Of a stretch of 64,000 nucleotides of DNA, positions 4,935 to 46,775 are shown in pieces. Both the position numbers and the translations under genes were made by a program. This DNA is from Kudoa neothunni (Eukaryota > Animalia > Cnidaria): assembly GCA_964304625.1 (NCBI GenBank), contig OZ199839.1:11066847-11130846 (forward strand). Reading direction: 5' to 3'. Each line of letters starts with the position of its first letter. Within the stretch, counting starts at the first letter, position 1. The notes below the pieces were generated by a model. The model saw only the letters and a list, made by a program, of their open reading frames with translations. It was not told where the DNA came from and did no database searches.

Positions 4935-6777
4935 ATGAAACTATTTTGGATTCTACTGATATGTAATTTTTTAATTTGTAATCAAAATGTTGATCCTTTT
5001 AGGTTGTCTCAATGTTCTCTATTCAAACGCCGAAATTATTGATAAAGATTATAGCAATAGTGAAAACCTTGAACATAAAGATAAGTCTCCCCCCGAATTA
5101 AAGCACCGAATTAAATGCATACTAAATCGGAATTTGCCGTTTAAACAATTTGACGCAGAAAAATACAATTACACTAATGAGGCGAGCCAAGTTTGCGATG
5201 TGGCACATTTTCTAAGTGACTCGAAGAATTATCTTAACACGCAAGAAAATAATTATGGTTTGAAAAGCCAAAGACTGCTGGAAATAATCGAAGTAAGTAA
5301 GTTTATAAAGCAGACAACATTTATTTCATTTAACTATGAAAAAATTAAATCAATTATTGAAAAATACATTGACAATATTAATAATATTATCCAAAACGAA
5401 AGTAAAATAAAAAGTGATGCCCAGTTGTTTAAAAATAAAAAAAGTGAATTTATTTCTGAATGGGAAGATTACAAAAACAAATACGACCAAATTAATGTGG
5501 CAAAGAGAGAAATAAAAGAAATTTTCGATTCCGTAGTCAGATCGAAACAAATTTGTTCCGGAAATGCGCAAAGCGTTGACGATTACGATCATATAATAAG
5601 CAAATATAGTGTAAAAGACCTCTTGGATACCAACTGGAAAACGATAACCGATAGCGCTGATGTGCTGAAAATTGCATGCGGAAATGAGAAAACTATTCCA
5701 AAAATCGATACAATTATAACCACGGCTTTTGATGATTATAAAGAGATTATTGAAGAAATCAGAGTGCAAGAAGATGATTTAACCAGTAAAGTTCAAGATT
5801 TGTCCAAAGAAGCTTCCAATTATAGTAGTCTGATAAATGATATCAACCAAATAACTCACAATAATTTAATTGCTAAATACGATCAACTAACGAAAGATTA
5901 TAATGATGCTGTTAAAATGATTGAAACTAACAAAAGGGAACGGAGTTTCTGGAGCGATTATCTCAGAAGGGTATCTGTTCACGTATTAAAGAAAAGCGAA
6001 GCTGAAAAAGATTCATTTGAGAAAGCGATTAGAGCTCTGAAGGAATATTTAAATGAGAATATAGACAAAGATGGAAATGAAGAAAAACTTAAAATATTAA
6101 CAGGACGCCTGGAAAACGTAATCGAAAATTTGCACACCCAGAGGGATACAATGCTAAACATAGCCAAATTAAATGCGAAAAACGTAGAAATCACGGAAAA
6201 ATGGATTAAAGCTATCTCTGATGCATTAGAATCACGATTTTATAAAAATAAAGACCGATATCGGAATATATATGTGGGAAATTCGACTCCCAGCAATACC
6301 TACGCTTTCAATAGAAGCGCGACATCTATTACCGAATATGTAAACGAACTTAAATCAACGGTGGAAAATATAAGAGAAGGATTGAGTAAAAGCACCCAAC
6401 TTTTTAATTCTGCATCAATTAACAAGGATAGAATTGAAAATGAAGGGAAGGAAGTGGAGAAAATATTTGAATCCCTACACATCAACGTACCGACTGCGCC
6501 TAAAAACGACGGGGGTAATTCAAAACCGAATATTATGAACCAAACAAGTGAGGTAACGACGGACCCAAAAATGAACAATGTTACAGCTGAAGAGCAAGAT
6601 CAATCATCAGAAACGACAACAGCTACAATTACCAATAATTCGAAAAGTCAAAGCAAATCTAGTTTGATTGCTATCGTGGCAACTGTGTTAGGGCTTTTGG
6701 TGATTATTATTATTGTTGGAGTGGTAATATACCGAACCAAATTGGCAACCAATCAAAAGTTCAACGATAAAATTTAG
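4935..6777 (+). CDS. Surface-protein family copy 1 (type A): type-I membrane protein, ~600 aa; exon1 4935-4962, 40-nt intron 4963-5002, exon2 5003-6777
   Basis: ATG at 4935 plus a phase-1 GT..AG intron gives MKLFWILLICCLNVLYSNA-EIID, a good signal peptide. Long helical K/N/E/I-rich ectodomain with 4 Cys, T/S/N-rich stalk, TM helix (LIAIVATVLGLLVIIIIVGVVIY) and tail RTKLATNQKFNDKI. The same exon layout occurs in all paralogues. Confidence 0.9.
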
Positions 6778-6949
6778 TCTTTGTTTGATGCAAAATTCAT
6801 ATTTATTTAATTCATTTTTAGTATTTTAGATTTATATGGAAAATTATTATTTTTTTATATTCATGTCTGAGTTTTATTTATGAAATTATAGAATTATTTT
6901 ATTATTATAGTGAATTTATATATAATAATATAAATGGTTTATAAAATAA

Positions 6950-6985
6950 CTAGTGCGAAAACCCAAGCGTTGCCGAGGAGTGGGT
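6950..6985 (-). mobile_element. Helitron-like 3' end immediately downstream of type-A genes (also 27272-27305)
   Basis: On the minus strand a hairpin (CCCCGGCAAGGCCGAGG in the copy 3 flank) is followed by CTAG/CCAG then T. It lies exactly where the type-A and type-B 3' flanks diverge. Confidence 0.55.
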
Positions 6986-9900: not shown

Positions 9901-10067
9901 AAGGAATTATATTATGTGAGGATATTAAAATCAATATGAAATAGGGAGAAATTCTTCCAAAACTTTGTAGGAATAAGTATTTAACAGTTATTTTTAAAAC
10001 TATTATCAATCTCTATCTTTTATATCTCTTTTATTTTTTGGTGATGCATCCCCTAATAATTATAATA

Positions 10068-10920
10068 CAGTAAGAAACCAAATTCACGTAATCCCCTCGG
10101 GACCAAGGAAAAGTGCGTAAAACCGGTCACGTCCAATTTCACTCACCCGCGTGCGCAATTATTCAGAAAAAATTGGCACTTAATAATGATTAAATTGCGT
10201 TTATAAAGGCTAATTAACTATATATTAATTTTTAAATGATAATTAAAACTCGAGAAACGTGTTAACAGTACAAAAATATTTGTCAACGATCTATGAAATA
10301 CTCTTCTTGTTGCTATCGGTAGAATACGGCAGTTTCGTCTACATTTTAAAAATAATTTTCAGAGTATCTTTTAAAAAATGTTCTGATTTAATTCGTCTAT
10401 TACGAAGTAGTTTCAGATGTAGAAACAGTAGATTACCTAATAAAATTTGATTTTTTAATGTTGGACCTTTTTTTAAAGAGCAAAACCTGCCACGAATTGC
10501 ACATGAAGGCAAACCTTTTTCTTTGACGAATTGATTTCTCTTGATAATTATCGTGAAGACGCTTATTACAATCTTTCTGCTTCGTGTCCACCCAATCCAC
10601 TCATATACATTTTCATCAACAAAATTAAATTGTCTTGCATACAAATTATTTCTATTTTTAGATTATAAAACCATTTATATGTTTTGATTATTTTATTTTC
10701 CATCTCTAGGATGACATTAGGAGTCGGGATAATAGATATTTTAAAATGTGATACAGTGACAGTTTTTGGGTCGTTAGATTGAAGACTTTCATAATAACTA
10801 GTAATATTGTATTCTTCGACAATAGGTATAGTTATAGGAGTTTATGACATTAAATATTAACTTAACTAAATGATAAACAAGAAGCACCCAGGAAAAGTGC
10901 GTGAAATTGGTTACCTACTG
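10068..10920 (-). mobile_element. pogo/Tigger-like element, internally deleted
   Basis: TA TSD; TIRs CAGTAAGAAACCAAATTCACG / CGTGAAATTGGTTACCTACTG; CENP-B-type HTH remnant DENVYEWIGWTRSRKIVIS; exact empty site (attataaTAatactta) at ~30135-30150. Confidence 0.85.
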
Positions 10921-10954
10921 TAATACTTAACATGACTATTTTCATGGTAATTAA

Positions 10955-13268
10955 CCCATTCGAGTTTTATGTATCGAAAATGATACACCAGTATTTCGAT
11001 TGTATATCTATATATAAATAATATACCTATTTTTTCCCCATTTTAATTTAAGTGAAAAATAAAAATTGTTTATAATATAACGATATAAATGTAAAATTAT
11101 TTATTTGGAAGTTTTACTGATTCTTTTTTTTCCGTCCGCCTAAGTATGGGCATCGGCACGAAAAAATGTTTCTGTTGTGCTAGAAGAAACTGAAACTGCT
11201 AACATATATTATCTTTTGAATTAATTTTACATTGTATTCAATTTAAACATCATACCTAAACTGATTGCGGAAATAATATACTTTAACTAGTGTATCATTT
11301 TCGATGCATAAAACCCAAGTGTTTACGGTAAACTCTCAAAATGAACGTCACTGAGTATTTAAAATTACCTGATGCAATCAAAAATTTTGACGAAATTTGC
11401 GATAACACATTACTGATATTGTTGAACTTCCGCCTGACAATGTTGGTGTAGTTACTGATGAAGAGGACAGTTATATTCCCATTGGCGATAATATCATCAG
11501 AGACAATGATATCCATGATATTGCGGGTCATATTGAAATATTTACTATTTTAGGAGATCCGGGAGAAATAGAATTTATTGAAAAGGTTTTATGGAGAAAA
11601 TATACGAATGAATTAATTCAAAAAAGAGAAAACAGGGGTGAAAATGTACCAATTCAATATGATCTATACCCAGGTTTTTTTGAATTAAATCTGTTATTTT
11701 AACAAAATTTAGATTCATATGAAATATATAAGCAATTATTTGATGACAATCTTGTATTGAAAATAGTTAAGCAGACAAATATTTACTCTCGCCAGAAGAA
11801 TGATCATGACTTTCACGTATCTGTTAATGAAATGAAAAATTTCATAGGCATACTTATATTATCTGGTTATCATAACTTACCAAGACAGAAAATGTATTGG
11901 GAAACTGCTGAAGACTCTGGCGTCCAATTAGTTAAAAAAGCCATGACTTTAAAACGTTTTAAAGAAATTAAACGTTATGTACACTTTGCTGATAACAACT
12001 CAATCGATGTAAGCGATAAAATGGCTAAATTAAGACCGTTAATCGATAAGTTGAATGCTAATTTTAAAAAATTCTAGATTTTTGATAAAACATTATCAAT
12101 CGATAAACAAATGGTGCCTTATTTTGGTATGCACTCGGCCAAAATGTTTATAAAAGGCAAACCAGTAAGGTTCGGATTCAAGTTATGGATTATGGCCAGC
12201 AAGTCTGGTTATATATACAGCTTCAAAATTTATTGCGGTAAGAAAGAGCAAATAACCAATTTTGTCTCGGTGAGAATGTGGTTTTAAATTTTCTAAAGGA
12301 TATTGATGATTTAAGTGAAGTGGATCTTTATATTGACAACTTCTTTACATCCTACAAATTACTAAAGTTGTTGAAGGAAATGGATGTGGCGGCTACTGGT
12401 ACAGTAAGACCGAATCGAACTGGGAAGCGTCCTCTTTTATGCTTTAATGTTTTTTCCAAAAATAAAAGAGGATATTTCGAACAATATGAAGATTCTCATC
12501 AAATTTATTGTTCCCAATGGAATGACACGAAGCCGGTTATTGTAATGAGCAACCACTACACATGTTATCCATTAGTGTCCATAAAAAGATACTCCAAAAA
12601 GGATAACAAAAATATAATTATTGACCAGCCTCAAATGATACATAAATACAACAAAAACATGGGTGATGTTGATTTGGCCGATAATGGTATTGCCAATTAT
12701 AGAATTTCTATAAGAGGAAAAAAATGGTATTGGCCAATTTTCACTAACCTGATATCCATGTGTGTTGTTAACCCCTGGAAAATTTATAATTCCTTAACAG
12801 ACAAACCTATTGATCTTTTAGAGCACACCAGCGCAATCGTGTCAAATTTGATAAAAACCTCAAATGATATACCTAACAAGAAAAAATCCAAATTATCTCA
12901 AATTATTAAATCTAATATGTGCCCAAAGCCCCTAATAACAACTGATAAATCTGGAAAAAGACTGAGATGCGCCATATGCCATAAAATCACCGTATATTTT
13001 TGTGAAGGGTGCTCCACCGGACTCCATACAAAATGTTTCGCCCTATTTCACAGTTGACGAATAATTTTCAATATAGTGTCGTAATAATATAATTAAAACA
13101 ATTATTCTTATATAGTATTAATTAAGTTTTTATTTTTTGCACATGCACGTTCTCGGGGGTTTTATGTATCGAAAATGATACATTCATAAAATCGCAATAT
13201 TTTTTTAACCTATTATCACAGTTTAATTTTAATTCTTATAATTTTTTAATATAGAAAACCTGAATAGG
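10955..13268 (+). mobile_element. piggyBac transposon with disrupted transposase (PGBD3-like)
   Basis: TTAA flanks; CCCATTCGAGTTTT / AAAACCTGAATAGG ends; repeated subterminal motif gtatcgaaaatgatac. Motifs KPVRFGFKLW, YIDNFFTS, TGTVRPNR, YNKNMGDVDLAD, KKWYWPIF and a C-terminal Cys-rich domain. Stop at 12075 and frameshift ~12265. Empty site at ~30172. Confidence 0.93.
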
Positions 13269-15461: not shown

Positions 15462-18400
15462 GGCAGTGTCTATTTTGCCGGACGCGCTTTTTCTCTTAAA
15501 ATAATAATTCAATCGCTACAATTTTTTCCTAAAAATATCTTTTATAAATGCAGAATATAAATTTAGTGTCATTAATTCAGTGACGAATTTTTAACATAGC
15601 TAATTTGTATCCATAATATCCAAATGAAAATACAGTAAAGTAAAACTATTTGGCCAATTCGTATTTTAAGTTTTTATAATTAGCTGAACATTTTTAGCAG
15701 GTGATTGATACATCACTAAAATTTAATAAAATGTTGAGTATTCTACTTTAAATAATAAATGTTTGAAATTATCTTGTATGGCAACGCCAAATAATTGTGA
15801 CAGTTTAACTTCCACATAATATTATATTTGAATATTATATATCGATATTAGTGTTATTATTACTATCATCATTTTCTTTTTTTCTCAAACCAATAACTGT
15901 TTGAAATACACCTTTTGGTCTACCTCTCAATTTCACTACTGTTGGCAGTTTAATTCCTATAATTTTATGAATTTAGCAAAATGGACAAAAGATACACACC
16001 CTTCAAAGATGGATTTTTAGTTGTGGTATCATCTACAATATTCGGGATCTCCATATCAATTATTGATGATGGAACGTTATCATTAACTGCTTCTAGTATA
16101 TCCTCATTCTCTAATCGTGATTCCTCAGTAACTAAACACGAAATAAAAATTCTACTAAAGACAATATCATTAATTACATGTTGGGATTGAAATCTCTTGA
16201 TTGTTTATGATGACAGATTCAGACATTAACTTGAACTAAATTAAGTTGATATATGAATAGTGGAAAAAATAGTCACCTTATCCAGAGAATCCCCATTGGA
16301 AATAAGAGAGATTAATTCACCTAAAATCTTTTTTAATGAATCATATTGACTCCCTGTTTTTTCAGACCCTAGCGAAGCTATTTTCTTACAAAGAATTTCT
16401 AGCTCCCTGTATCGCTTAAAAGCAGAATTCGGAACAGGGCACTGACTCGAAATTTCTGTAATACTTGGTTGCACACAACACGAAGGATTTTGAAGATATA
16501 AATTTTTGGTCATTTGAATAAATGACAGGTAATATTCTTTGTGCCACCTCTTATTACAAATTTTCTCTTCATATAAATTCATGTTCATTATTTTTCTAGC
16601 GTAAATAATATGCCTACATGGTAACTCCATACTTACGTAGAAACAACATGTACAACTATTGGGATCAGGATTGGCATAGGATTCGATATGATTATTTATT
16701 TCATCCTGCATAATATTATACACATATGAAGTTAACAATGTTTTATATTGTTCGTTAATGTCTGAATTTAATTTCTCAGCAGTTTGGGTTGTCCCACTCT
16801 CTAACTGCTTTATTCTCACGCTCAGTCCTCATACTTGGTAAATAAATAAGCAGATCGCTGAAAAAGACTTCAATTGTTGAGAATTTTTTTTATGATTTGT
16901 TTAATTTTGGAATTTATGCATTCTAATCGATTATTTGTTCTATTTAAAAAAGTACCCTTTAGGTTCATGTATGCCGGGCACCATTCATGTTTGATTGGAT
17001 CCCAAGATTTATTATAATAAGTAATGATTTTTTTGTTACATGTATTATTTAACAATTCATGGTAATTTTCATAAATTTTTGGATCATTGGTATAGCAAAG
17101 CTTTTGAATCAACTCTAAGGCAGTTTTTCTTTCGGCTTTGTTTATTCCCATTCTTAATGTAGAGATTTCTCTCCCAAATGTTCTTAAGACATGGTACAGG
17201 CATAAGTTTGTACTTACGTTAGGAAATATAGATCTTATAGAGTTTCTTTCAATCATGTCTTTATCCGTAATGAAACAAACTGTTTTGGTTGACATTTCCT
17301 CGTTATGTTTAAGTAGAGACTGACATAACCAGGTAACAGTCACGGTACTCTCCTCAGATAAAAGAGCAATAGCTCCTATTTGACTTTGCCCAAATGAATC
17401 GATAAACAGACATATATACAATGGCATACGATTATTGATTAATTTATAAGTGGCATCCATAAATACTAGTTCGGGAAATTTTTTAATAACGTTTTTCATA
17501 TAAAGGTCCTGGAAAAATATTCCAGTCATTTCATTGGAGTTATTGTGTAATATTTCGATAGTTGCATTTGGGTGAGAATTTTTTATTGAATTAAACAATT
17601 CCAAAATATCCAACGAAACATTTTTTTTAGTGTTTAGATATAATTATGGATTTGCTTCAACGAAACCTTTTTTTGTGATTGGTTCATGATTTCTACTTGT
17701 ACTCTTTTTAAATTTCCATCATAAAAATGAACATTTTTTATAAGATTCTTGCTTTCTTCATCTAATTTTCTATTCATTGGTAAAAAATCCCTTAAATGCT
17801 CATTTCTGTTGCAGCTGTGAGTAAGATCCAATTTTCTAATAACTAACATATTCATGTTTTTAGGAACTCGCAGTGTAATGAAGAAATTGCAACCACTTTT
17901 ATGGCTGTTGATTTTTCTCTTCCCAACACTTTTAGATTGTATCTGAATTCAAATTAATTACATCAACGTTTATATAGATAGTTACATTTTTACCACCATG
18001 AACACAACAAAAAGTGGCTTCATAATAAACAAGATCAGAGTTCATGTCTCTATCAAATTTTTTTAGGGCAGTTGAGATTTTTCTAGAGTCTCGGACCCAG
18101 TAACAAAAGTTGTTCCGCTTTGAGTACTTATCCATGAATTCTTTAGCCTTTTCAAAGTTTGTAAATGCATTTCCGACCATAGGTTCAGATGTAATATCCT
18201 GAATTAGTAGTGTTTGATCAGACTCTCCTTCCATAGTGATTCTACTCGCGACTATCAAAGTTACAACCGCACGCTAGAGGGTATTTTACTCGTTTATGCT
18301 GTTATAACACATAAAATTAGATTAATTATATAAATAATACAGATTTATAAAAATTTAATGTCGTTTATAATGAAACTTATGAATGAGTTTAAAATATCCT

Positions 18401-23070: not shown

Positions 23071-24118
23071 ATGAAATTATTTTGGATTCTTCTGACATGT
23101 AATTTTTTAATTAGGAGTTATAATGTTAATTCTTCTAGATTTGTCCAAAGAAGCTTCCAATTATAATAATCTGATAAATGATATAAACAATATCACTAAA
23201 ACTCATTTAACTACTAAATACGAGCAGCTAACGAAAGGTTATAATGGTGCTGTTGAAATGATTGAAAATAACAAAAGGGTCAGGAGTTTCTGGAGCGATT
23301 ATCTCCGAAGGATATCTGTTCACGTATTAAAGAAAAGTGAAGCTGAAAAAGATTCATTCGAGAAAGCAATTACTGCTCTAAATGGATATTTGAAAGAGAA
23401 TATAGACGAGGATGGAAATGAAGAGAAACTTAAAATATTAACAGAACGTTTGGGGAACGTAATCAAAAATTTTGACACTCAGAAGGATACAATGTTAAAA
23501 ATAGCCAAGTTGAATGCTGAAAAAGTAGATACCACAATTAAATGGATTGAAGCAATCAATAAGATATTTAAGTCACTATTTTTTCAAAATAAAGACCATT
23601 ATCAGGATATAAATGTGGAAAATTCGACTCTCAGCAATACCTACGCTTTCAATGGAAGCGCGACATCTATTACCGAATATGTAGACGAACTTAAATTCAA
23701 TATGACAAGTATGGATGTTGGATTGAAGATAAGCACTCAACTTTACAATTCTGCTTCACGCAACAAGGATGGAATTGAACACGAGGGAAAAAAACTGAAG
23801 AAAATATTTGAATCCCTACACATCAACGTACCGACTGTGCCTAAAAACGACGGGGGCAATTCAAAACCGAATACTATGAACCAAACAAATGAGATAATGA
23901 CGGCCCCAAAAATGAACAATGTTGCAGCTGAAGGGCCAGACCTATCATCGGAAACGACAGCAGTTACAATTATTAATGACTCGAAAAGTCAAAGCAAATC
24001 TAGTTTGATTGCTATCGTGGCAACTGTGATAGGGCTTTTGGTGATCATTATTATTGTTGGAGTGGTAATATATCGAACCAAATTGGCAACCAATCAAAAG
24101 TTCAACGATAAAATTTAG
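23071..24118 (+). CDS. Surface-protein family copy 2 (type B), in-frame internal deletion, ~335 aa; exon1 23071-23098, intron 23099-23138, exon2 23139-24118
   Basis: Same upstream block, exon1 and 40-nt intron as the other copies. Exon2 starts directly at LSKEASNY (786 nt missing relative to copy 3) and stays open through the TM and tail. Confidence 0.8.
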
Positions 24119-25265: not shown

Positions 25266-27099
25266 ATGAAACCATTTTGGATTCTATTGATATGTAATTT
25301 TTAAATTTAGAATTATAGTTATGATTCTTTTAGATTGTTTCAATATTCTCTATTCAAGTACCGAAATTATTGATAATGATTATAGGAATAGCGCAAACGA
25401 CACATCACATGAAATGATGCACCGAATTAAATGCATGATAAATCAAAATTTGCCATTCGAACAATATGACGCAGAAAAATACAATTACACTGATGAGACG
25501 TACCAAGTTTGCGATGTGGCAAATTTTCTAAATAACTCAACAAGTACTCTTAACAAGCAAGAAAATGAATATGGTTCGAATAATCAGAAATTGTTGGAAA
25601 TAATTGAAGTTAGTAAGTTTATACAGCGGACGAAGTATATTTCAAATAATTACAAAAATATTAAAACTATTATTGAAAAACACGCTGGAAAAATAGGAAA
25701 TATTGTCCAAAAAGAAAGTAAAATAAGAAATGATTCCACGTCATTTAGAAATGACAAAAGACAATTTATTTCTAAATGGGAAGGTTACAAAAACAAATAC
25801 GACCAAATTAATGCGGCAAAGGGAAAAATAAAAGATATTTTCGATTCAATAGCCAAATCGATAAAAATTTGTTCTGGAAATGTGAAAAACGTTACCGATT
25901 TCAATTATGTAATTGGAAAATATAATGTGAGCGACTATTTGGATGAGAATTGGAAAATAATTACTGAAGGTGCTGAAGAGTTGAAAACTGCATGTCAAAC
26001 CGATAACGAAAAGACTATTCCCACCATAGACACAAGTATAACCACGGCTTTTGATGATTATAAAGAGATTATTGAAGAAATCAGAGTGCAAGAAGATGAT
26101 TTAACCAGTAAAGTTCAAGATTTGTCCAAAGAAGCTTCCAATTATAGTAGTCTGATGAATTATATCAACCAAATCACTCACAATCATTTAATTGCTAAAT
26201 ACGATCAACTAACAAAAGGTTATCATGATTCTGTTAAAATGATTGAAAATAACAAAAGGGAACGGAGTTTCTGGAGCGATTATCTCAGAAGGGTATCTGT
26301 TCACGTATTAAAGAAAAGCGAAGCTGAAAAAGATTTATTTGAGAAAGCGATTAGCGCTCTGAATGAATACTTAAATGAGAATATAGACAAAGATGGAAAT
26401 GAAGAAAAACTTAACATATTAACACAACGTTTGGAAACATACACCCGAAGTTTTAGCGAAAAACGGCAATCGATATTATCCAAAACTACGCTGGATGCTA
26501 AAAATGTAGATATCACAATTGAATGGATTAAAGCTATCTCTGATATAATAAAGTCACAATTTTATCAAAATAAAGAACGATATCGAGATATATATGTGGA
26601 AAATTCGACTCCCAGCAATACCTACGCTTTCAATAGAAGCGCGACATCTATTACCGAATATGTAAACGAACTTAAATCAACGGTGGAAAATATAAGTGAA
26701 GGATTGAGTAAAAGTACTCATCTTTACAATTCTGCTTCACGCAACAAGGATGGAATTGAACACGAGGGAAAAAAACTGAAGAAAATATTTGAATCCCTAC
26801 ACATCAACGTACCGACTGTGCCTAAAAACGACGGAGGTAATTCAAAACTGAATACTATGAACCAAACAAATGAGGTAACGACGGACCCAAAAATGAACAA
26901 TATTACAGCTGAAGAGCAAGATCAATCATCAGAAACAACAACAGCTACAATTACCAATGATTCGAAAAGTCAAAGCAAATCTAGTTTCATTGCTATCATG
27001 GGAACTGTGTTAGGGCTTTTGGTGATCGCTATTATTGTTGCAGTGGTAATATACCGAACCAAATTGTCAACCAATCAAAAGTTCAACGATAAAATTTAG
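25266..27099 (+). CDS. Surface-protein family copy 3 (type A), ~597 aa; exon1 25266-25293, intron 25294-25333, exon2 25334-27099
   Basis: Spliced N-terminus MKPFWILLIYCFNILYSST-EIID; open frame; same 4 Cys, stalk, TM and tail. Confidence 0.9.
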
Positions 27100-36053: not shown

Positions 36054-37887
36054 ATGAAATTATTTTGGATTCTTCTGATATGTAATTTTTTAATTTGGAA
36101 TTATAGTTTTGATTCTTCTAGGTTGTCTCAATATTCTCTATTCATACGCCGAAATTATTGATAATGATTATAGGAATAGTGCAAACGACACATCATTTGA
36201 AATGAAGCACCGAATTAAATGCATAATAAATCAAAATGTGCCGTTTAAACAATATGACGCAAAAAAATACAATTTTACTAATGAGACGAACCAAGTTTGC
36301 GATGTGGCAGATTTTCTAAGCGGCTCAAAGAATAATCTTAACACGCAAGAAAATGAATATGGTTCGAATAATCAGAAATTGTTGGAAATAATCGAAGTAA
36401 GTAAGTTTTTAAATCAGACGAAGTATATTTCAAATAACTATGAAATAATTAAATCAATTATTGAAACATACATTGGAAATATTACTAATATTATCCAAAA
36501 CGAAACTACATTGAAAAGTGCTGCCGCGTTATTTAAAAATAAAAAAAGTGAATTTATTTCTGAATGGGAAGATTACAAAAACAAATGCGACAAAATTAAT
36601 GCGGCAAAGGGAAAAATAAAAGATATTTTCGATTCAATAGCCAAATCGATAAAAATTTGTTCTGGAAATGTGAAAAGCGTTGCCGATTACAATTACGTAA
36701 TTAGCAATTATAGTGTGACCAAATATTTGGATGATAATTGGAAAATAATTACTGAAGGTGCTAAAGAGTTGAAAACTGCGTGTCAAACCGACAACGAAAA
36801 GACTATTCCTACCATATACGCATGTATTACCACGACTTTTGATAATTATAAACAGATTTTAAGCAAAATTAACAATCAAAAAGACGATTTAATCAGTAAA
36901 GTTCCAGAGTTAACCCAAGAAACTTCAAATTATCGTAGTCTGATAAACGATATCAATAGAATAACTCAAGATAATTTATTGACTAAGTATAACCTGCTGA
37001 TGGTGAGTTATAATGACGCCCTCAAAATGATTGAAAATAATAAACGGGAAAGGAGTTTATGGAACGATTATATCGTTAGAGTGACTGTTCATTTATCAAA
37101 GGGAAGCGCAACAGAAAAAGATTCATTCGAGAAAGCAATTACTGCTCTAAATGGATATTTGAAAGAGAATATAGACGAGGATGGAAATGAAGAGAAACTT
37201 AAAATATTAACAGAACTTTTGGGAGACGTAATCAAAAATTTTGACACCCAGAGGGATACAATGCTAAAAATAGCCAAGTTGAATGCTGAAAATGTAGATA
37301 TCACAATTAAATGGATTAAAGCTATCTCTGGTATAATAAAATCACAATTTTATGAGAATAAAGACTATTATCAGGATATATATGTGGAAAATTCGACTCT
37401 CAGCAATACCTACGCTTTCAATAGAAGCGCGACATCTATTACCGAATATGTAGACGAACTTAAATTCACGATGAAAAGTATGAGTGAAGGATTGAGTAGA
37501 AGCACCCAACTTTTAAATTCTGCTTCACTCAATAAGGTTGGAATTGAAAATGAAGGGAAAAAACTGGAGAAAATATTTGAATCCCTACAAATCAACGTAC
37601 CAAATGTGCCTAAAAACGGCGGAGGTAATTCAAAACTGAATACTATGAACCAAACAAATGAGATAATGACGGCCCCAAAAATGAACAATGTTGCAGCTGA
37701 AGGGCCAGACCTATCATCGGAAACGACAGCAGTTATAATTATTAAAGACTCGAAAAGTCAAAGCAAATCTAGTTTGATTGCTATCGTGGCAACTGTGTTA
37801 GGGCTTTTGGTGATCATTATTATTGTTGGAGCGGTAATATACCGAACCAAATTGGCAACCAATCAAAAGTTCAACGATAAAATTTAG
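36054..37887 (+). CDS. Surface-protein family copy 4 (type B), ~597 aa; exon1 36054-36081, intron 36082-36121, exon2 36122-37887
   Basis: Spliced N-terminus MKLFWILLICCLNILYSYA-EIID; open frame; same architecture, with two extra Cys (NKCDK, YACIT). Confidence 0.9.
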
Positions 37888-39297: not shown

Positions 39298-39548
39298 TTA
39301 GGTGAAGATATATATATATATATAGATGCGACAATATTTCGATAAAGTTATAAGACTATTATTCAGCAGATTTAGGCAAAAAGTATTATAAATATGGAAT
39401 TATACACACGTATCGCATTTCATTAATTTTCCTAGTAAACAGTGATTGTTATGCATTCCAAACGTAGGTTCTATTCTTAGTGGAAATCAAACGACATTAC
39501 AGTACGTAAACTTAGATTCTACATGAATAACCACTTAGAATAATCAAG

Positions 39549-42500
39549 GTTTTTAATTCTTAAGTATTTATTTGTTTATCTATCTATATTCAGCAGGATT
39601 ATAAAATGTTCGGCAGTTACCTTGTGTGTGTCATTTGATCTTTGTGTTTCTATCAGCGCTTGCATTCCAAAACATAACATTAATAATTAAAAAGCAATAA
39701 AATTTTTGTTCAATAAACATGCAGAGAAGTAGATTAGTTAATTATTGTGTGAATATTCCATTGGTTTTGTAATCAATACGTACATTCATATATATCAACT
39801 ACAATCGATGACTACTAATTCGCAATCCCCCTTGGGGACGGGGGAAAAATATGAATTACACATCAGTGACGTCTAATTCTTAGTAGTTTTCGTGCGTGTG
39901 ATTGATAAAAATACAATGAAAAATTGACTTTTATTGTTTCATCGATTTAAAAATATTCATAATTTAGATCAAAACTAAAAAAATAATAAAGCACTCTTTT
40001 GACGAACCAAAATATATTGTTATATGGAAATAATATTATTAAGAACTTTTGGGTTTCATCTGATGTATGTAAAACAATTTATTCGAAACAAAAATAACCA
40101 TGTTTTGGAATTACTTAAGAGGCGTTAATTGATAGAACAGCGCTGTCTCATCGATGCTATATATTTTATCCTCCTTATAATTTTCAAGAATTTAAAGAAG
40201 TTGAGTGTTCTAATCTGTAATGATTCCTATGGGTACCGTGTTAGATTCAACATGGAAACTGTTTTTTTAAGTTGAACCTATTTTTAAAGTCACGAAATTA
40301 TCCATAACTAACATTTTTTAAATCATTTTCAGAAGAATCGATGTTATATCTTTTGTTAATTATTTCGTTGGGCGATAATTCGATATTTTTGATCCCATCC
40401 AAACGAACCACTCACACACGTTGATCAGCGTCGTCATATTTTCTTTTCCACATTGATCTTTGTTTAACTAGAAGCAATTTTCTTTCAAATGTCTGTTTAT
40501 TTTGAACTTATTTTCTAAAATGCCATTTAAAGTTGAAATATAACCTATGTTGAAGTGTTTAATAATTTCCGTATTTCTATTTAAGGGCGGTAAACTGTCA
40601 TAATATGTAATTATGTCGTATTTCTATTGAAGCATTATAAATTTGTGAATTCTTTTTGGGAAATTTAGAAATAATTACGATTAATCGGTTATTACACAAT
40701 TTTAAAACTTTTTATTCCACAAAATAAAAAATAACTCTTGTATTTAATTATGAACTCATAATACATGTTATTTGATAAATTTAGCCGGATGGATAAAGTT
40801 TTAAGGAAAGTTACGAATTAACGGTCACCTACTATATATATAAAACTAATAGAAATTAACAAAATATGGCGTAATTGTATTCGTTGTGTCAACAATAGGA
40901 TATATGATATATAAAAATCATAATTAGTATTGTTTATCAAAGTTTATTGAGTTTAGCATCAATATTTCCTTGATTTATTTTTTGTTTCAAGTTAATTTCT
41001 AAATTTTGACAAGACCGACGATCCATATTTTAGGTTATATGCAACTTTTAAGAAAATTTTAAAGTTTAATTTAAAAATGATGTATACATTTCGTTAAATT
41101 AGTGTGTCCCAACCTTTTTATTTCACGGACTCTCCACTAGTTAATTTAATTGAATTTGAACCCTTAAGTATAGTCAACATATATTTATATTCATGATACC
41201 GTTCCATAATTGTTTTTTAAAGTTAGGTATATACGAAAGAATAATTTTTGTTGACGAAATTTTTATAGTATAATCCTTTTCACGGACCTCTATAAATAAT
41301 TACGCCAGCCCTTGATTGGGATGGATTTTATCGAATTCCCAGTTATTCAATAACTCACTATTAGGGGTTACAAAATGTGATTATCGTATCGAATAGTCTT
41401 GATACTCTAAAATATCAAAAGTTACTCAAGATTTCAATACGGTGTTGATCATTTTAATTTTTTAGGGAATAAGCTAAAACAATGTATATCTACTTCTATT
41501 ATATATGAAACTTAGCGCGACCTTCCCGGCTTCGTTAGAGATCGGTAAGATTTTTCATTGAAACTTAGGTTAAATCCTACAAGCAGTACGTAAATCCTGT
41601 CAATTAACCCGTAGAAGTGTATATGTAGAGATTACACACGCTATTGGGTAACAACCTTGAAATATAATAGTTACTTGTAAAAAAATAATAAAAAAGACTG
41701 AAAAATTTGACTATATGTAAAAAATAAAGTGAACATGTATATATAGATCATGGTATATCACAAAAATACCATTTATATTTGATGTAATTAGCACCCTTAA
41801 AAACATATTAACTGCAAAAAATAATGCTAATATAATTTTTTAAAAAGTAATTAATGAATTAAAGTCTGATAGTTGACCACATCGTCATTATTTAAATTAA
41901 ATGGTAAAATTAATATCATAAATTAGTAATAACTTTGTTCTTAATATAAATAAGTTGATACAAAAAATATATAAACTAAAACAAATATTAATTTATGATA
42001 TTATTTCTTTAAAAAGTACATTGTTGTTATACAAAATAAATGGTAGAACGGATCATTTATAATAAAACATGTCAAACTAATTAAAATGATTGAATCGAAT
42101 AATTTCTGAACGAAACATTATTGAAAATGTTTTTAAGACGTATTAATTACGTGAAAAGTAATTTGTGGACAATAAAATGGGGTTTTATTTGTTTCTGGAA
42201 ATGTAACGAAGATTTCACGTGTGCGGACAATTTTGTACTCGGGATTTCGTAATAAAAATAAAAATCATTATAATTAACTGAGTTATTTCTATTGGTGTTC
42301 TTTTATTTTATTATTGGCAAAAAATAAAAAAAAGAGAATAAAAACGATGTTTTTTAGACCGCTTCCTACCCTATTATCCGACCTATAACTGGTTTTCCCC
42401 AATCTTAATAAGTATTTGATAGTCTAATTTTTTCTTAATATTAAAAATGAGAATATCTTCTTCAAGAATTGATAAAAATATTTAATAACGAAATACAAAT

Positions 42501-43660
42501 ACAACTAACAAAATCCCAGGTTTTTTTTTCGACCTTGTGAGCTTAATACATATAATCTTCGATATGGTAATAAAAAAAATCTCGAGATTTGAGGAAAATA
42601 TCTCAATATTAGAAATTTCCGATTGAGCTTCGACTCAGTCATAGATAAAAGTCACGCCACACGACCATCACCAATTTGTTTCTGCTTTTAACCCTTCGAA
42701 CCCCAATGTTGCCACTTGGTAACATTTTAATTTTGTGAGTGTTTTGACTGGTTAATTACATTTTTAAATCTATCCTTATTATAATAATATAGTTAATGTT
42801 TATTTGATTTTATAAAAATTTGTTTGTTTAATATCAAGAGCAATAGATACGAATATCAAACTCTAAGACATATATAAAAAGGGTAAAAGTTTCCTGCAAA
42901 TAAACTTAGAATTTTGACATTTCAATAAAATTCAAAAATATACACATACACTATTAAATCAGTTTATACCAAAAATTAATCTAAAAAGAAAATATATTTT
43001 GATATGTAAACTATAAGGACAGATTAATCCACTTTACCGTTTGGAAACATTGGGGTCACTGGGTATAGCGAGCGTTGTCACACGGCAACGTTCGGCTCTA
43101 GATTAAAGTGTGTTTGTATTCTTTTGAATAGATTCTGACCAGATTGGGGAGAAGGAGTAAATAGGGCAGACTTTTATAAAATCATATTATTACCAGTTGG
43201 CTGGAATCGGATTCCATTTCGTATAGTCAATATGATGATATTGTATCCGAATACAGTTCTAGTGATGAGGATGACTACAGTTTAAATAAGACAATGAATG
43301 CGAAAAAATTTGATAAACAGTTGATATTGAAACAACTGATATTTTTAATAAAGTTGAAGATATTATATTTGAGCGTTTCACCTATTTCAACCGATTCTTC
43401 AATGATAGATTATTTGAAAATATTTGCATTAATCGTAATGTTTATCTGTGCCTCAATAAAAACAGAAACTGGTTATTGGACTGTTGGAATTATAATAAAT
43501 AATTTAATATTTTATTTTTGATGGTGGAGGAGTAATTTCTTGGTTAAAAACAAAGTAACATAAAAACAAGCACACGCGCATATTGAAATAAGTAGTGTCC
43601 CACTGTTCCCATTTGGCATCATGTGTGTATCTTTTTATTTTTTGAAATGAGTGATTCAAT
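39549..43660 (+). repeat. Segmental duplication, copy of window start 1-~4150
   Basis: Direct line-by-line match. Lacks a ~70-nt segment that lies between cacacga repeats in the first copy (3099-3172). Confidence 0.92.
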
Positions 43661-43753
43661 TGTTGGATATTTTAAATCAAGTTATTTAAAATTAAACATA
43701 ATGAGCAGAAAAAAATTTTTCAGCCGCTGAATTAAATTCGGGGTTCAAGGGGG
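42692..43753. mobile_element. piggyBac-derived non-autonomous element (related, chimeric copy at ~3200-4245)
   Basis: TTAA-CCCTTCGAACCCC ... GGGGTTCAAGGGG-TCAA ends; repeated subterminal aatgttgccatttggcaac-type palindrome. Confidence 0.6.
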
Positions 43754-43999
43754 TCAACTTAGTAATGCCGAAGAAGCGTGTGTGTCTGAATTCTTGCATA
43801 TAGTATGGAATCGACTTTATCTTAACGAATCGAGCGAAAAACCTTAATAAGTAATATATTCAGAACTCTTTTGAAATGGCTAAATGAAGCCTTCAACTCT
43901 CAAATAATGCCTATAATCCGTATATTCTAATCATACGGAAGAAAAACCGGTTAAACTGGAGGTGAAAAGAGTTAGATTTAGATTTTAAGGGACATTGTT

Positions 44000-44280
44000 A
44001 AAACTTGAGTTCACATCAGAGAAGAAATCGATGCTTGCAACTTTACATCACCTAGCATAACATATTATAAAGACAAAGAAACCTCACGACAATGTTGAGA
44101 AACTAATTAAACCTTGCGCCTTAGGCATGATTGGGCTAGCTAATATGTTGTAGAGAAGCATAACAGGAAATTTAAGCTATTCCGTTCTTTAAGCGCCCCA
44201 TTCAACGACGCATTTGTGAAATGGGGCCAAATTATTTGTGATCAAGTCATCGAAAATCTAAATCAATCAGAAATTTTTAA
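44000..44280 (+). mobile_element. hAT Buster/ZBED5-like transposase fragment
   Basis: Translates IIKTKKPHDNVEKLIKPCA and IQRRICEMG, matching the Buster-type KKPHTIGEELIKPC / RRI.EM motifs. Confidence 0.6.
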
Positions 44281-44825
44281 TGAAAACAAAATTCAGATAA
44301 TTTTAATATTTTGAGGGGGAGAATAGCTTTACATAATGGTGAAATCAATAATTTAATATCCCAATTATTCTAAGGGATATTTTTACTCCAAAGATAACCA
44401 CTACCAAATTAATAATAAACGTCGTTTGATTTTTTGAATATACAGCAAATATCCTTTAGAAAATGAGATAAAAATCTGCCGTCCAAATGGACCTAGTTTA
44501 CTCGGAAGGAATTCGATTTAGGCATAGTCATTGGGTCAATGTGTATAGATTGCAAGCATAATTAACTGGTTATATTAAGTCTCATCAGTTTGTTTTTTTC
44601 ACCATTGATATTTTTTTACTACGATACTTCACAATAAATACGATAATTAATATTTCTTAAAATAATAATATTTTACGATAGAGAATTTTTTTAAACATTT
44701 GTCAATATACTTAATAGAGAAGAGTTTATATAAAATATAGTTTTTCTTCATAATATCTGTATTAATATATACAATGTGTACTTAACTTCATTCATTGACA
44801 TTTATCGGAAGCTGGCGATTATATT

Positions 44826-46775
44826 ATGGACCCTTTGATTCCGATAATTCTCATTTCAGGTAAATTTTTATCATAAGAAAAAAAATCACGATCTATTTTT
44901 AAGCTATATTCAATCCGTTGAATTCAATAAGAAATTTTGATGTTTCCTTTGAAAATAATGAAAACATTGAGTTGGATGGTCACAATGATAATAGTAAGAT
45001 GTATGCAATAAAATGCACTCATAATCCTAACAGACCATTTAATCAATACAACAAAGAAAACTTCAACTTTGATACTCAGGAATATCAGTATTGCAACACG
45101 AACAATTTACAACAGGAAGCCCGCAACAAGATGGACCATACCCGTTTGAGCTATCAGCGACCTCATGAACAATTTCCTGAAATGGAGGCTGCGTTCATTT
45201 TTTTAAAAAACTCCGCATTTATTACCGAACATATTGTCACTCTCAGTAATATTCTGAATAACTACTATGGCAATCTCGATCAATTGATTATCGATGCATC
45301 AAAAGCGGAAACACAACTTCCTGAATTAATCAATGCTAATATAGCTTTACTTAATAAAATTAGATTCTGTTGAAATAGTAGAAAACGAAGTGGCCAAGTA
45401 TAAACGCGATGTTCATGACTTATTTTCTTCCATTGAAATCTCTTTGAAAGTATGCACTGAGGCAATTCGTCAAAACGATTATGACAACTATGTGAATATT
45501 GTAAGCAGTTATAAAATAGCAGAACGTTTGAGCCAGTACAAGGAAACGATTAAACAGAAGGTCAAATTAATCAATGGAATCTGTGAAGCAGCTAGAAACC
45601 CACCAAGGAGGGGAACTGCTTTGAACAATGTGATAAGCAACTATGAAGGCTTGGTACGTTCTTTGGGAACAATTGTTCCATATTTGTCCAATCAAATATA
45701 TGGTTTAAATGAAGTGGTTGCAAAAATATCAAGCATGGATTGAAAAAATAAACAAACATACACCAAATCAACTATCAAACGATCTTAAACAATTGATCGT
45801 AATATTAAAAAGTAATGACCAACGGCTTAGAACTTTTGAAATAGAAATTAAAAAAGTGGAAACTTTTATTGAAGAAGTAACTGGTTTATATTGATAAGCT
45901 TTCTTCTCGAGGCCAAGAAATATTAAATGTAACCATTTCGCATATAAGACGTTATTTCCAACAATATAAGGATAGAAAAAAGATAATGTCAGACTTGGAA
46001 TTATCGGCAGAATCACTACTAAGCGACAGAATTCCTCAATTATCGCCGATGCATCCCCCAGTATTAAATAAAGCTAACCTAAACCTCAATAATACAATTC
46101 TAACGAGAGATGTCTATAACGGTATTAAGAAAAATACAACAAAAAATATTAAATGAAAGAAATAATTACCTTGTAAGAAGAAGACTAACAAAATACGCTA
46201 CAAACCCGTGGGACTATTCATTGACAAATGATGAGACAAGCATTGTTGAATACTTACGCAGGATTGACGAAGTGAACAATGATATAAAATCAATGACTAG
46301 CAAGAACTACGACAATACCCACGTATTACAGAATTATTTAAAGGGCATTCATAATCAAGTTGCTTACTTGAAGGATCATTTTGATCACCAAAAATCCATA
46401 CAAATACAAATATCTGAACCTCATCAAAATATCTATTATTATCATTCTGAAAATTTTGAAAAAGACCAACAGATTTTAAACCATAATGTTGACTCTGCAA
46501 CAGAAATAAAACCAGCCAATGGATCAGAAGACACATCATCAACAAATACAAACCGACGTCATAAAACTACATCAAAAAAGTCCAGTCCACCCCAAGAAAC
46601 TACGGCACATCCAAATATTAATGAAAACAGCCGCATGACCAAAAGCAATATGGTTCTTGTGTCTAGTTTGGTGGCTGTGGTTACATTATTAATTTTGATT
46701 GTTGCTGCTATTTTTACTTTGAAAAAACAACACCAATTCCAATGGAAGAAGCCAAAAATAAGCGTAGAAATATAA
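44826..46775 (+). pseudogene. Divergent member of the same surface-protein family, frameshifted and with stops; exon1 44826-44859, 44-nt intron 44860-44903
   Basis: Spliced start MDPLIPIILISAIFNPLNS with the same phase-1 intron in the signal peptide. IKCTHNPNRPFNQYNKENFNFDTQEYQYC aligns to IKCILNRNLPFKQFDAEKYNYTNEASQVC; DLFSSIEISLKVC to EIFDSVVRSKQIC; TSIVEYL to TSITEYV. Stalk and TM at the end. Frame changes near 45360, 45740 and 45900-46100. Confidence 0.8.

What the first reader, a model, noticed from the sequence alone, without database searches (positions are those of the whole stretch)
4935..46775. Tandem array of an unrecognised variable surface-protein family: candidate antigenic-variation / immune-evasion locus
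Seen: five same-strand paralogues with signal peptide, helical ectodomain (~480 aa with 4 conserved Cys in full-length copies) carrying many N-x-S/T sequons, mucin-like stalk, TM and short tail. Among copies 1-4 the TM, tail and 3'UTR are nearly invariant while the exposed ectodomain differs heavily, and by eye mostly non-synonymously. The array sits in TE-dense, duplicated DNA next to normal housekeeping genes. I recognise no known domain. Inference: this constant-anchor/variable-ectodomain layout parallels parasite variant antigen families (trypanosome VSG/ISG, Babesia ves, Pneumocystis Msg), here in an animal-type genome.
Basis: partly seen in the sequence, partly recalled or inferred. Interest (0 to 1): 0.9.

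Follow-up and report, generated by a model that had tools for sequence, protein, structure and literature searches.

The report
Fast-diverging surface-protein family in Kudoa
A tuna-muscle parasite (the myxozoan Kudoa neothunni) carries a previously undescribed family of about 19 intact membrane-anchored helical proteins whose outer part is being reshuffled and changed much faster than the DNA around it, which fits a host-facing surface repertoire, although nothing yet shows that the genes are expressed or switched.

Summary
The window carries three full-length genes, one half-length gene and one broken distant member. Two more copies lie just upstream of the window.

Each gene has a 28-nt signal-peptide exon, a 40-nt intron and one long exon. 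That exon encodes a ~470-aa all-helical ectodomain with 4 invariant Cys, an S/T-rich stalk, a TM helix and a short tail.

The genome matches the published Kudoa neothunni assembly in size, chromosome number and telomere motif. It holds about 19 intact and 7 broken family loci, mostly within 1.5 Mb of chromosome ends.

No relative was found among 1.84 billion representative proteins, in Pfam or in PDB sequences. The fold is a generic long helical bundle; its likeness to trypanosome receptors is below noise.

- **Mosaic:** array copies are gene-conversion mosaics (34 runs against 83 expected).
- **Flanks:** in three independent paralogue groups, ectodomain synonymous divergence is 2-20 times that of adjacent non-coding flanks.
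- **Selection:** dN/dS is 0.46-0.81 in the array and 1.5-2.2 in the youngest pair.

The most likely reading is a diversifying, host-facing surface family. Programmed antigenic variation is not shown: the family is small and has no expression data. N-glycosylation sequons are not enriched. Earlier scan reports describe two other surface families in this genome.

The parts
4640..4934 (+). Conserved non-coding 5' flank of copy 1 (putative promoter and 5'UTR).
   Evidence: It is 97-100% identical among c0, c1 and c3. Only the six array units in the genome carry it.
4935..4962 (+). Copy 1, exon 1. It encodes the first 9 codons plus 1 nt of the signal peptide.
   Evidence: Pattern found 4 times against 0 expected. 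Read directly. The same 28-nt exon with a phase-1 intron is inferred in distant family members.
4963..5002 (+). Copy 1, 40-nt intron (GT..AG).
   Evidence: The published median intron length for this genome is 49 bp (PMC12239612). There is no RNA confirmation.
5003..6777 (+). Copy 1, exon 2. It encodes the rest of the signal peptide, the ~470-aa helical ectodomain, the S/T-rich stalk, the TM helix, a 15-aa tail and the stop codon.
   Evidence: ORF. AF2 model at pLDDT 89.4. Four invariant Cys.
6778..6949 (+). Conserved 3'UTR-like stretch of copy 1.
   Evidence: About 170 nt are shared by all array units at 88-100%. Beyond that lies a dispersed repeat.
23071..24118 (+). Copy 2, the half-length gene. 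Exon 1 is 23071-23098, the intron is 23099-23138 and exon 2 is 23139-24118. The signal peptide is joined directly to the C-terminal helical-bundle half, then stalk, TM and tail.
   Evidence: It starts at model residue 244, near the domain border at about 235.
25266..27099 (+). Copy 3, full length. Exon 1 is 25266-25293, the intron is 25294-25333 and exon 2 is 25334-27099.
   Evidence: It is 74% identical to copy 1.
36054..37887 (+). Copy 4, full length. Exon 1 is 36054-36081, the intron is 36082-36121 and exon 2 is 36122-37887.
   Evidence: It is 71% identical to copy 1.
44918..46775 (+). Copy 5, a broken member of a different subfamily. It is closest to the loci at C2:1.13 Mb and C3:10.25 Mb.
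   Evidence: There is a frameshift near 45340-45354, and 45741-46101 is full of stops in the gene's frame. The stalk, TM and tail ORF at 46110-46775 is still open.
11757..13057 (+). piggyBac-type transposase remnant between copies 1 and 2.
   Evidence: PF13843 at E 1.7e-28 and 8.9e-27.
16241..18258 (-). MULE / ZSWIM-type transposase remnant.
   Evidence: PF10551, PF21056, PF04434 and PF21599.
1..4176 (+). Segmental duplicate of 39549-43693. The blocks are 81-97% identical, and the main 3.1-kb block is 97% identical. One copy lies upstream of copy 1 and the other upstream of copy 5.
   Evidence: Self-BLAST.

Best explanation
This is a tandem array from a lineage-restricted multigene family of Kudoa neothunni. 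The family has about 19 intact and 7 broken loci and encodes type I membrane proteins.

Protein architecture:
- a signal peptide split by a tiny conserved intron;
- an all-alpha ectodomain of two elongated helical bundles, the N-terminal one carrying four invariant Cys and the motif H-x-I-K-C-x-x-N-x-N-x-P-F;
- a low-complexity S/T-rich stalk;
- one TM helix and a short basic tail.

Shown here:
- The array grew by segmental duplication.
- Its copies exchange segments by gene conversion.
- The gene ends and non-coding flanks stay nearly identical, while the ectodomain diverges 2-20 times faster than those flanks, even at synonymous sites.
- dN/dS runs from about 0.5 up to 1.5-2.2 in the youngest pair.

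Inferred:
- The proteins sit on the parasite surface or at the host-parasite interface.
- Selection favours ectodomain diversity. Conversion homogenises promoter and anchor, and converted ectodomains are either filtered out or shuffled into new mosaics.
- The result is a diversified host-facing repertoire of coat proteins or ligand receptors, not a single conserved function.

Whether members are expressed one at a time or switched is unknown.
For: Gene models and family:
- Gene models.
- Family size, four invariant Cys and the motif.
- No homologue among 1.84 billion representative proteins (only 4 coiled-coil-type hits, E >= 1.3e-6), in the 5.8-billion word search, in Pfam, in PDB sequences or in the ESM Atlas.

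Structure:
- Confident all-helical models at pLDDT 89.4 and 87.7.

Gene conversion:
- 130 informative sites support three incompatible groupings in 34 runs against 83 +/- 5 expected, with 0 of 10,000 permutations as low.
- Tracts 100% identical between copy 3 or c0 and the upstream frameshifted copy lie beside tracts of 70-80% identity.

Flanks against ectodomain:
- Array pairs: flank divergence 0.011-0.15 against ectodomain synonymous divergence 0.22-0.30.
- L011/L019: 0.061 against 0.18.
- L015/L017: 0.020 against 0.095.
- Fisher p is 3e-6 or smaller in every case.

dN/dS by four methods:
- Array: 0.46-0.81.
- L011/L019: 0.78-1.09.
- L015/L017: 1.52-2.24, with bootstrap 95% interval 1.05-2.44.

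Other:
- Amino-acid identity rises towards the membrane in array copies: N-domain 63-65%, C-domain 70-79%, TM and tail 90-100%.
- 22 of 26 loci, and 11 of 15 independent clusters, lie within 1.5 Mb of a chromosome end (p = 4e-5 for clusters).
- The organism is an obligate parasite of fish.
Against: - There is no expression, localisation or host-contact evidence. Three RNA runs labelled with the species gave zero reads (no test), and the genome paper reports very few parasite RNA reads.
- Kudoa plasmodia live inside muscle fibres (my own knowledge), where antibody pressure is weak. The selective agent is therefore unclear.
- dN/dS is below 1 in the array itself. The above-1 result rests on one pair, with Fisher p = 0.057.
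- Recombination makes pairwise dS hard to interpret.
- High dN/dS could partly reflect relaxed constraint.
- The assembly is from low-coverage HiFi data with purged haplotypes, so some near-identical flanks could in principle reflect assembly history.
Confidence: 0.6

Rival explanations
1. This is a programmed antigenic-variation system. One member at a time is expressed on the parasite surface. Switching occurs by transcriptional change or by gene conversion from silent and broken copies, letting the parasite escape fish antibodies.
For: - The layout is a constant anchor with a variable ectodomain.
- Copies are conversion mosaics, and identical tracts are shared with a frameshifted copy.
- Broken copies lie beside intact ones.
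- Loci are enriched in distal chromosome regions.
- dN/dS exceeds 1 in the youngest pair.
- The parasite infects a vertebrate.
- Antigenic change is reported for another myxozoan, Sphaerospora molnari (10.64898/2026.02.11.705288).
Against: - There are only about 19 intact genes, most only 16-30% identical to each other.
- The nearest locus is about 250 kb from a chromosome end, so the loci are not at telomeres.
- All array copies keep the same upstream region, so no distinct expression site is visible.
- No expression data exist.
- The parasite lives inside muscle fibres (own knowledge).
Confidence: 0.12
2. The family serves the parasite's own biology, for example cell-cell recognition between sporogonic cells, spore or valve surface structure, or attachment in the annelid host. 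Its fast evolution would come from relaxed constraint or from recognition-type selection, not from the fish host.
For: - The strictly conserved N-terminal motif and four Cys across members that are otherwise 16-30% identical point to a shared structural or binding core.
- dN/dS is below 1 in most pairs.
- There is no evidence of host exposure.
Against: - Ectodomain-restricted divergence exceeds that of the non-coding flanks in three independent groups.
- dN/dS exceeds 1 in the youngest pair.
- Both are unusual for structural proteins.
- Family loci sit in distal, TE-rich regions.
Confidence: 0.2
3. Part of the pattern is an assembly artefact. Divergent haplotypes or strains of one or two loci were placed in tandem, or paralogues were mis-joined, which would produce identical flanks around different cores.
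For: - The assembly comes from low-coverage HiFi reads of an infected tuna, with haplotypic duplication purged afterwards.
- The upstream 'broken' copy differs from intact copies by eight +1 insertions, all in short homopolymers, with no in-register stop. That looks like read error.
Against: - The same flank-versus-ectodomain contrast appears in pairs 375 kb and 725 kb apart, one of them inverted.
- Units differ by TE insertions and spacing.
- Mosaic tracts of about 100 nt are far shorter than HiFi reads.
- Distant family members sit on all three chromosomes.
Confidence: 0.05
4. The genes are envelope-like genes of a mobile element or endogenous virus, spread by transposition.
For: - They are near-intronless type I membrane proteins with long helices.
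- They lie amid TEs.
- Generic fold hits include gp41-type helix bundles.
Against: - The phase-1 intron inside the signal peptide is conserved across members only 16-30% identical.
- The 5' flank is confined to the six array units.
- No LTRs or gag/pol genes are linked to the units.
- Pfam and fold searches give no viral glycoprotein above noise.
Confidence: 0.03

Closest known systems
Trypanosome three-helix-bundle surface proteins (ISG65/ISG75, haptoglobin-haemoglobin receptor, factor H receptor, VSG)
   Same: - The ectodomain is an elongated helical bundle on a membrane anchor.
- ISGs are also type I TM proteins with a short tail.
- Both are multigene families in a parasite.
- Variability is greatest away from the membrane.
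- These structures appear among the top fold hits: 4x0j Z 9.9, 4e40 Z 9.7, 5vtl Z 9.4, 6xz6 Z 8.7.
   Different: - There is no sequence similarity.
- The Z scores are below the roughly 13 that the tool gives as background for helical bundles, and they tie with BAR domains, IKK1 and designed bundles.
- This ectodomain has two bundles and is about 470 aa long.
- The organism is a cnidarian, not a kinetoplastid.
- The repertoire is tens of genes, not thousands.
- No expression-site architecture is visible.
Candidate variant surface families reported in the myxozoan Sphaerospora molnari (VSP-like, RIFIN/STEVOR-like; PMC11792419 and preprint 10.64898/2026.02.11.705288)
   Same: - It is a lineage-specific, duplicated membrane-protein family in a myxozoan, proposed to vary the surface.
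- The size is similar, 18-27 genes.
   Different: - The Kudoa family has 4-7 Cys per ectodomain, so it is not Cys-rich with CXXC motifs.
- It does not match the RIFIN model. One broken fragment scores 17.4 bits against a cut-off of 32, and none of 18 intact members matches.
- I could not compare the sequences directly.
Other surface-protein families noted by this scan in the same genome (CD39-like pseudo-apyrases; a gene-conversion mosaic surface family)
   Same: - They are in the same genome.
- They are tandem or dispersed paralogues of membrane-anchored proteins.
- Gene conversion is reported for one of them, and a host-facing reading is proposed for the CD39-like family.
   Different: - They are different proteins on other DNA. 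The CD39 family has a known fold, whereas this family has no recognisable relative.
- Those notes are unchecked by me.
Borrelia paralogous helical outer-surface proteins (e.g. PFam12 BBH37/BBK01)
   Same: - They are all-helical surface proteins encoded by paralogous families in a pathogen.
- They appear among the fold hits at Z 9.0 and 7.6.
   Different: - They are bacterial lipoproteins of about 190 aa.
- There is no sequence similarity.
- The Z scores lie within the helical-bundle background.

Membership tests
Trypanosome VSG / ISG / HpHbR-type three-helix-bundle surface proteins | Detectable sequence or profile similarity to the family models | tested here: not met
   No Pfam hit to any trypanosome family in 18 members. 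Nothing in the PDB sequence profile search. Nothing among 1.84 billion representatives.
Trypanosome VSG / ISG / HpHbR-type three-helix-bundle surface proteins | Fold match standing above unrelated helical bundles | tested here: inconclusive
   Z is 8.7-9.9 for 4x0j, 4e40, 5vtl and 6xz6. These tie with IKK1, HD-PTP, BAR domains and designed bundles, and lie below the tool's background of about 13 for helical bundles. Foldseek E-values are 0.1 or higher.
Trypanosome VSG / ISG / HpHbR-type three-helix-bundle surface proteins | Membrane anchoring of a helical ectodomain (type I TM for ISGs) | tested here: met
   A signal-peptide exon, a 23-residue hydrophobic segment and a 10-20-aa basic tail are read directly from the sequences.
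RIFIN/STEVOR (PF02009) | Score above the Pfam gathering threshold | tested here: not met
   Only the broken copy-5 fragment hits, at 17.4 bits against a cut-off of 32, over its stalk and TM region. None of the 18 intact members hits.
Giardia-type VSP | Cys-rich ectodomain with many CXXC motifs and a conserved C-terminal pentapeptide | tested here: not met
   There are 4-7 Cys in about 473 aa. No shared C-terminal motif is seen across the family.
Antigenic-variation system (functional class) | Large repertoire of variant genes, often with pseudogene donors | tested here: inconclusive
   The genome holds about 19 intact and about 7 broken loci. Tracts identical between intact copies and a frameshifted copy exist. 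That copy may be an error-laden intact gene.
Antigenic-variation system (functional class) | Mutually exclusive expression and switching | not testable with these tools
   No RNA reads were laid on the locus.
Antigenic-variation system (functional class) | Diversifying selection on the exposed part | tested here: inconclusive
   dN/dS is 1.5-2.2 in one young pair, with bootstrap 95% interval 1.05-2.44 and Fisher p = 0.057. It is 0.46-1.09 in the other pairs. Recombination complicates the estimates.
Antigenic-variation system (functional class) | Telomere-proximal or clustered location | tested here: met
   22 of 26 loci, and 11 of 15 clusters, lie within 1.5 Mb of a scaffold end (p = 4e-5). 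None is closer than about 250 kb. Only one telomere is assembled (PMC12239612).
Viral or retroelement envelope glycoprotein | Location inside a bounded mobile element; viral glycoprotein domain | tested here: not met
   The 5' flank is unique to the array. The spliceosomal intron is conserved. No viral Pfam or fold hit rises above noise.

The most novel reading that the evidence does not exclude
Kudoa keeps a contingency-gene repertoire in the distal parts of its chromosomes. A dedicated process targets change to the ectodomain exon, either conversion with silent or broken copies or local hypermutation, while promoter and anchor are held constant. This would give a cnidarian parasite true antigenic or ligand variation, convergent with trypanosome helical-bundle coats.
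Probability: 0.12. Interest if true: 0.9.

Novelty: new variant of a known kind. Interest (0 to 1): 0.62.

Why it matters
Myxozoans are economically important fish parasites, and their host-interaction molecules are almost unknown. Variant surface families have only just been proposed for one other species, on weak domain hits.

This family is an orphan with a confident predicted structure. It has a clear, testable evolutionary signature: the ectodomain diverges faster than the neighbouring non-coding DNA, copies are conversion mosaics, and one young pair has dN/dS above 1.

If the proteins prove to be surface-exposed, they would be prime candidates for host recognition, immune evasion, diagnostics or vaccines in Kudoa. 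They would also be an independent case of the helical-bundle-on-a-stalk surface design known from trypanosomes.

Tried and rejected
**Homology searches, all blank**
- Word-indexed search of 5.8 billion proteins with copy 1.
- Exhaustive profile search of 1.84 billion representatives. The four hits are bacterial coiled-coil or low-complexity proteins.
- Pfam on single proteins and on all 18 members.
- PDB sequence profile search.
- ESM Atlas by features and by shape.
- I ran no further search on separate domains. The exhaustive HMM search has no length limit and covers the same collection.

**Fold searches**
- The whole ectodomain and the N-terminal domain alone gave only generic helical-bundle matches.
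- An internal duplication between the N and C halves is rejected (hhalign probability 2.5%).

**Expression**
- RNA runs X5-X7 gave zero reads, which is no test.
- X1 behaves like low-coverage DNA contigs.

**Organism identification**
- Nematode SL1 and TTAGGG telomere searches were negative.
- The paper search for the telomere motif was not decisive.
- An earlier scan note gave the lead to Kudoa neothunni. I checked it against the published assembly statistics.

**Other**
- Sequon enrichment is rejected.
- The RIFIN-like reading is rejected.
- My first in-register stop count for the upstream copy used the wrong codon register. It was redone.

**Handling of the spliced model**
- Searches used exon 2 by reference only. 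The 28-nt exon 1 was never joined to exon 2 for any search or fold.
- One script joined candidate exons only to display the first 60 or fewer residues.

Full report
**What is in the window**

The window is AT-rich (GC about 29%). It carries same-strand ORFs of 596, 331, 592 and 592 aa at 4987-6777, 23123-24118, 25321-27099 and 36109-37887. Three further ORF pieces lie at 44918-46775.

Aligning the upstream regions shows a perfectly conserved 28-nt exon beginning with ATG, then a 40-nt GT..AG intron that ends just inside each long ORF. The exon-1 pattern occurs four times in the window against zero expected by chance.

The real gene model is therefore:
- exon 1 (4935-4962 for copy 1);
- intron (4963-5002);
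- exon 2 (5003-6777).

The signal peptide is split by a phase-1 intron. Candidate exons of the same 28-nt size and phase precede the long exon in distant family members too. There is no RNA confirmation. I never joined the exons for any search or fold. One script joined candidate exons only to display the first residues.

**The organism**

The window is C2:11,066,847-11,130,846 of a 40.26-Mb assembly. That assembly has three large contigs (17.15, 12.04 and 11.05 Mb) and an 18.2-kb contig. The end of C2 carries 89 perfect copies of AGGTTT.

An earlier scan note named Kudoa neothunni. I checked this against PMC12239612. The published K. neothunni assembly is 40.2 Mb with N50 12.0 Mb and three chromosomes. 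One chromosome end carries (TAAACC)n, which is the reverse complement of the repeat I found. It also has a circular mitochondrial genome, a median intron of 49 bp and 45.6% repeats.

This match makes the genome that of a myxozoan (parasitic cnidarian) of yellowfin tuna muscle. The paper does not mention surface proteins or gene families.

**The family**

A protein search and then a profile search of the whole genome find about 19 intact and 7 broken loci. The array is larger than the window shows. It contains, in order:
- an intact copy (c0) 20.6 kb upstream of the window;
- a frameshifted copy just before base 1;
- copies 1 to 4;
- copy 5.

The four full-length array copies (c0 and copies 1, 3 and 4) are 67-75% identical to each other. 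They are only 14-22% identical to the rest of the family.

All 18 aligned intact members share four invariant Cys and the N-terminal motif H-x-I-K-C-x-x-N-x-N-x-P-F. They also share an S/T/N-rich stalk of variable length. Sixteen of the 18 have a TM helix and a short basic tail.

Copy 5 belongs to a different subfamily. It is broken by a frameshift and a stop-filled stretch.

22 of 26 loci lie within 1.5 Mb of a scaffold end. The same holds for 11 of 15 clusters counted as independent units (p = 4e-5). None is closer than about 250 kb.

**No known relatives**

Nothing was found in any of these searches:
- the 5.8-billion-protein word search;
- an exhaustive profile search of 1.84 billion representatives, whose four hits are bacterial coiled-coil-like proteins with E >= 1.3e-6;
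- Pfam;
- PDB sequences;
- the ESM Atlas.

These libraries also failed to return this genome's own proteins. They probably lack Kudoa data, so restriction to Kudoa is untested.

**Structure**

AF2 with the 18-member alignment gives a confident all-helical ectodomain (pLDDT 89.4). The N-terminal domain folded alone reaches pLDDT 87.7.

Residues 235-472 form an elongated helical bundle. Fold searches return trypanosome HpHbR, factor H receptor, a metacyclic invariant surface protein, ISG65 and Borrelia PFam12. These tie with IKK1, HD-PTP/ALIX, BAR domains and designed bundles at Z 8-11, below the tool's stated background for helical bundles.

The likeness to trypanosome coats is therefore architectural only. 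The two halves are not detectable repeats of each other. The half-length copy 2 starts at model residue 244. It keeps essentially the membrane-proximal bundle, the stalk and the anchor.

**Evolutionary dynamics: the array**

Identity varies sharply along the array units:

| Region | Identity |
|---|---|
| 300 nt upstream | 97-100% among c0, c1 and c3; 75-95% to c4 |
| TM, tail and first ~170 nt after the stop | 92-100% |
| Ectodomain DNA | 60-97%, in patches |

The upstream stretch occurs only at the six array units in the genome. The first ~170 nt after the stop are likewise confined to array units, and a dispersed repeat begins about 200 nt downstream of the stop.

130 parsimony-informative sites among four copies support three incompatible groupings. 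These are clustered in 34 runs against 83 +/- 5 expected, and 0 of 10,000 permutations reached so few.

The frameshifted upstream copy shares 100%-identical tracts with copy 3 and with c0. These lie beside tracts of much lower identity.

Synonymous divergence is 0.26-0.44 in the ectodomain but 0-0.07 in the TM and tail. The constant anchor is therefore not explained by protein-level constraint alone. The gene ends are being homogenised, or the cores replaced.

**Evolutionary dynamics: the rest of the family**

The same contrast appears in two further, physically separate pairs. L011/L019 lie 725 kb apart on C2. L015/L017 lie 375 kb apart on C3 and are inverted.

| Pair | Flank divergence | Ectodomain synonymous divergence | Fisher p |
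|---|---|---|---|
| Array pairs | 0.011-0.15 | 0.22-0.30 | 2.5e-6 or smaller |
| L011/L019 | 0.061 | 0.18 | 1.3e-6 |
| L015/L017 | 0.020 | 0.095 | 3e-8 |

dN/dS by four methods:

| Pair | dN/dS |
|---|---|
| Array pairs | 0.46-0.81 |
| L011/L019 | 0.78-1.09 |
| L015/L017 | 1.52-2.24 (bootstrap 95% interval 1.05-2.44; Fisher p = 0.057) |

Older pairs fall to about 0.4.

This fits rapid amino-acid diversification soon after duplication on a conserved helical scaffold, with recombination mixing the variants.

**What it most likely is**

The most likely reading is a lineage-restricted family of surface or interface glycoprotein-like membrane proteins whose ectodomains are kept diverse.

- **Shown:** gene structure, family size and location, lack of relatives, helical fold, mosaicism, the flank-versus-ectodomain contrast, and elevated dN/dS.
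- **Inferred:** surface location, host contact, and selection for diversity.
- **Not shown:** expression, mutually exclusive use, and switching.

The three RNA runs carrying the species label gave no reads on the locus, which is no test. The DNA-like run only confirms that the sequence exists.

Programmed antigenic variation remains possible (about 0.12). It is weakened by three points:
- the repertoire is small and mostly ancient;
- every array copy has the same upstream region;
- the parasite lives inside muscle fibres (my own knowledge).

- Sequons are not enriched. Array copies carry 30 against 28.5 expected from composition. The remaining members carry 30 against about 85 expected, which is a depletion.
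- The 'fifth paralogue' is a broken distant member.
- The weak RIFIN hit on its stalk and TM fragment is far below threshold and absent from all intact members.

**Caveats**

- The assembly is from low-coverage HiFi data with purged haplotypes.
- The upstream 'pseudogene' differs from intact copies by eight +1 insertions, all in short homopolymers, and has no in-register stop. It may be an intact gene with read errors.
- Pairwise dS in recombining genes mixes histories.
- No comparison with other Kudoa genomes was possible with these tools.

**Context**

Candidate variant surface families (VSP-like and RIFIN/STEVOR-like) have recently been proposed for the myxozoan Sphaerospora molnari (PMC11792419; 10.64898/2026.02.11.705288).

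Earlier scan reports on other DNA of this genome describe a CD39-like surface family and another gene-conversion mosaic surface family. K. neothunni thus seems to hold several such repertoires.

Noticed in passing
G000:C2:11064254-11066037 (locus L008, just upstream of window base 1): This array copy was scored as broken. It differs from intact copies by eight single-base insertions, each lengthening a short homopolymer, and has no in-register stop codon. That looks more like HiFi read error than decay. It shares 100%-identical tracts with copy 3 and with c0.
   Followed up: partly
Copies 1, 2 and 4 match only at chance level (29 of 61).
   Followed up: yes
family-wide (alignment A3): N-x-S/T sequons are depleted in the 14 non-array members, at 30 observed against about 85 expected from composition. 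The four full-length array copies (c0 and copies 1, 3 and 4) sit at expectation.
   Followed up: partly
L016 (C3:10256090-10257595) and L020 (C3:10250816-10252147): Two members of an older tandem cluster end their open frame before any TM segment. They are either secreted forms or have a 3' exon that I did not look for.
   Followed up: no
window 4620-4650 and the equivalent positions in the other copies: A TATA-like block (CACTATAAATATTCAC in four of the five aligned copies; c4 differs at two positions) lies about 290 nt upstream of exon 1, followed by AAG|GTAAAT in four of the five copies (the half-length copy reads AAAATCAAT). This could be a 5'UTR intron donor.
   Followed up: no
window 11757-13057 (+), 33106-33549 (+), 16241-18258 (-): piggyBac-type (PF13843) and MULE/ZSWIM transposase remnants lie between the copies. 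MULE expansion is also reported for other myxozoans in preprint 10.64898/2026.02.11.705288.
   Followed up: partly
window 51424-52047 (-) and 62805-63197 (-): Two neighbouring genes were noted. One exon encodes a fibronectin type III domain followed by a TM helix (PF00041, E 1.3e-6). The other is the N-terminal exon of lipin (PF04571, E 5e-32).
   Followed up: no
G000:C4 (18,219 bases; loci L035 and L039): The putative mitochondrial contig has 44% GC against about 29% in the nuclear window. Long ORFs appear only when TGA is read as sense. No standard cloverleaf tRNA is found. This fits published Kudoa mitochondrial genomes.
   Followed up: partly
window 1-4176 and 39549-43693: A ~4.2-kb non-coding segment is duplicated (81-97% identical blocks; the main 3.1-kb block is 97% identical). 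One copy lies upstream of copy 1 and the other upstream of the broken copy 5. It has no ORF of 100 aa or more.
   Followed up: no
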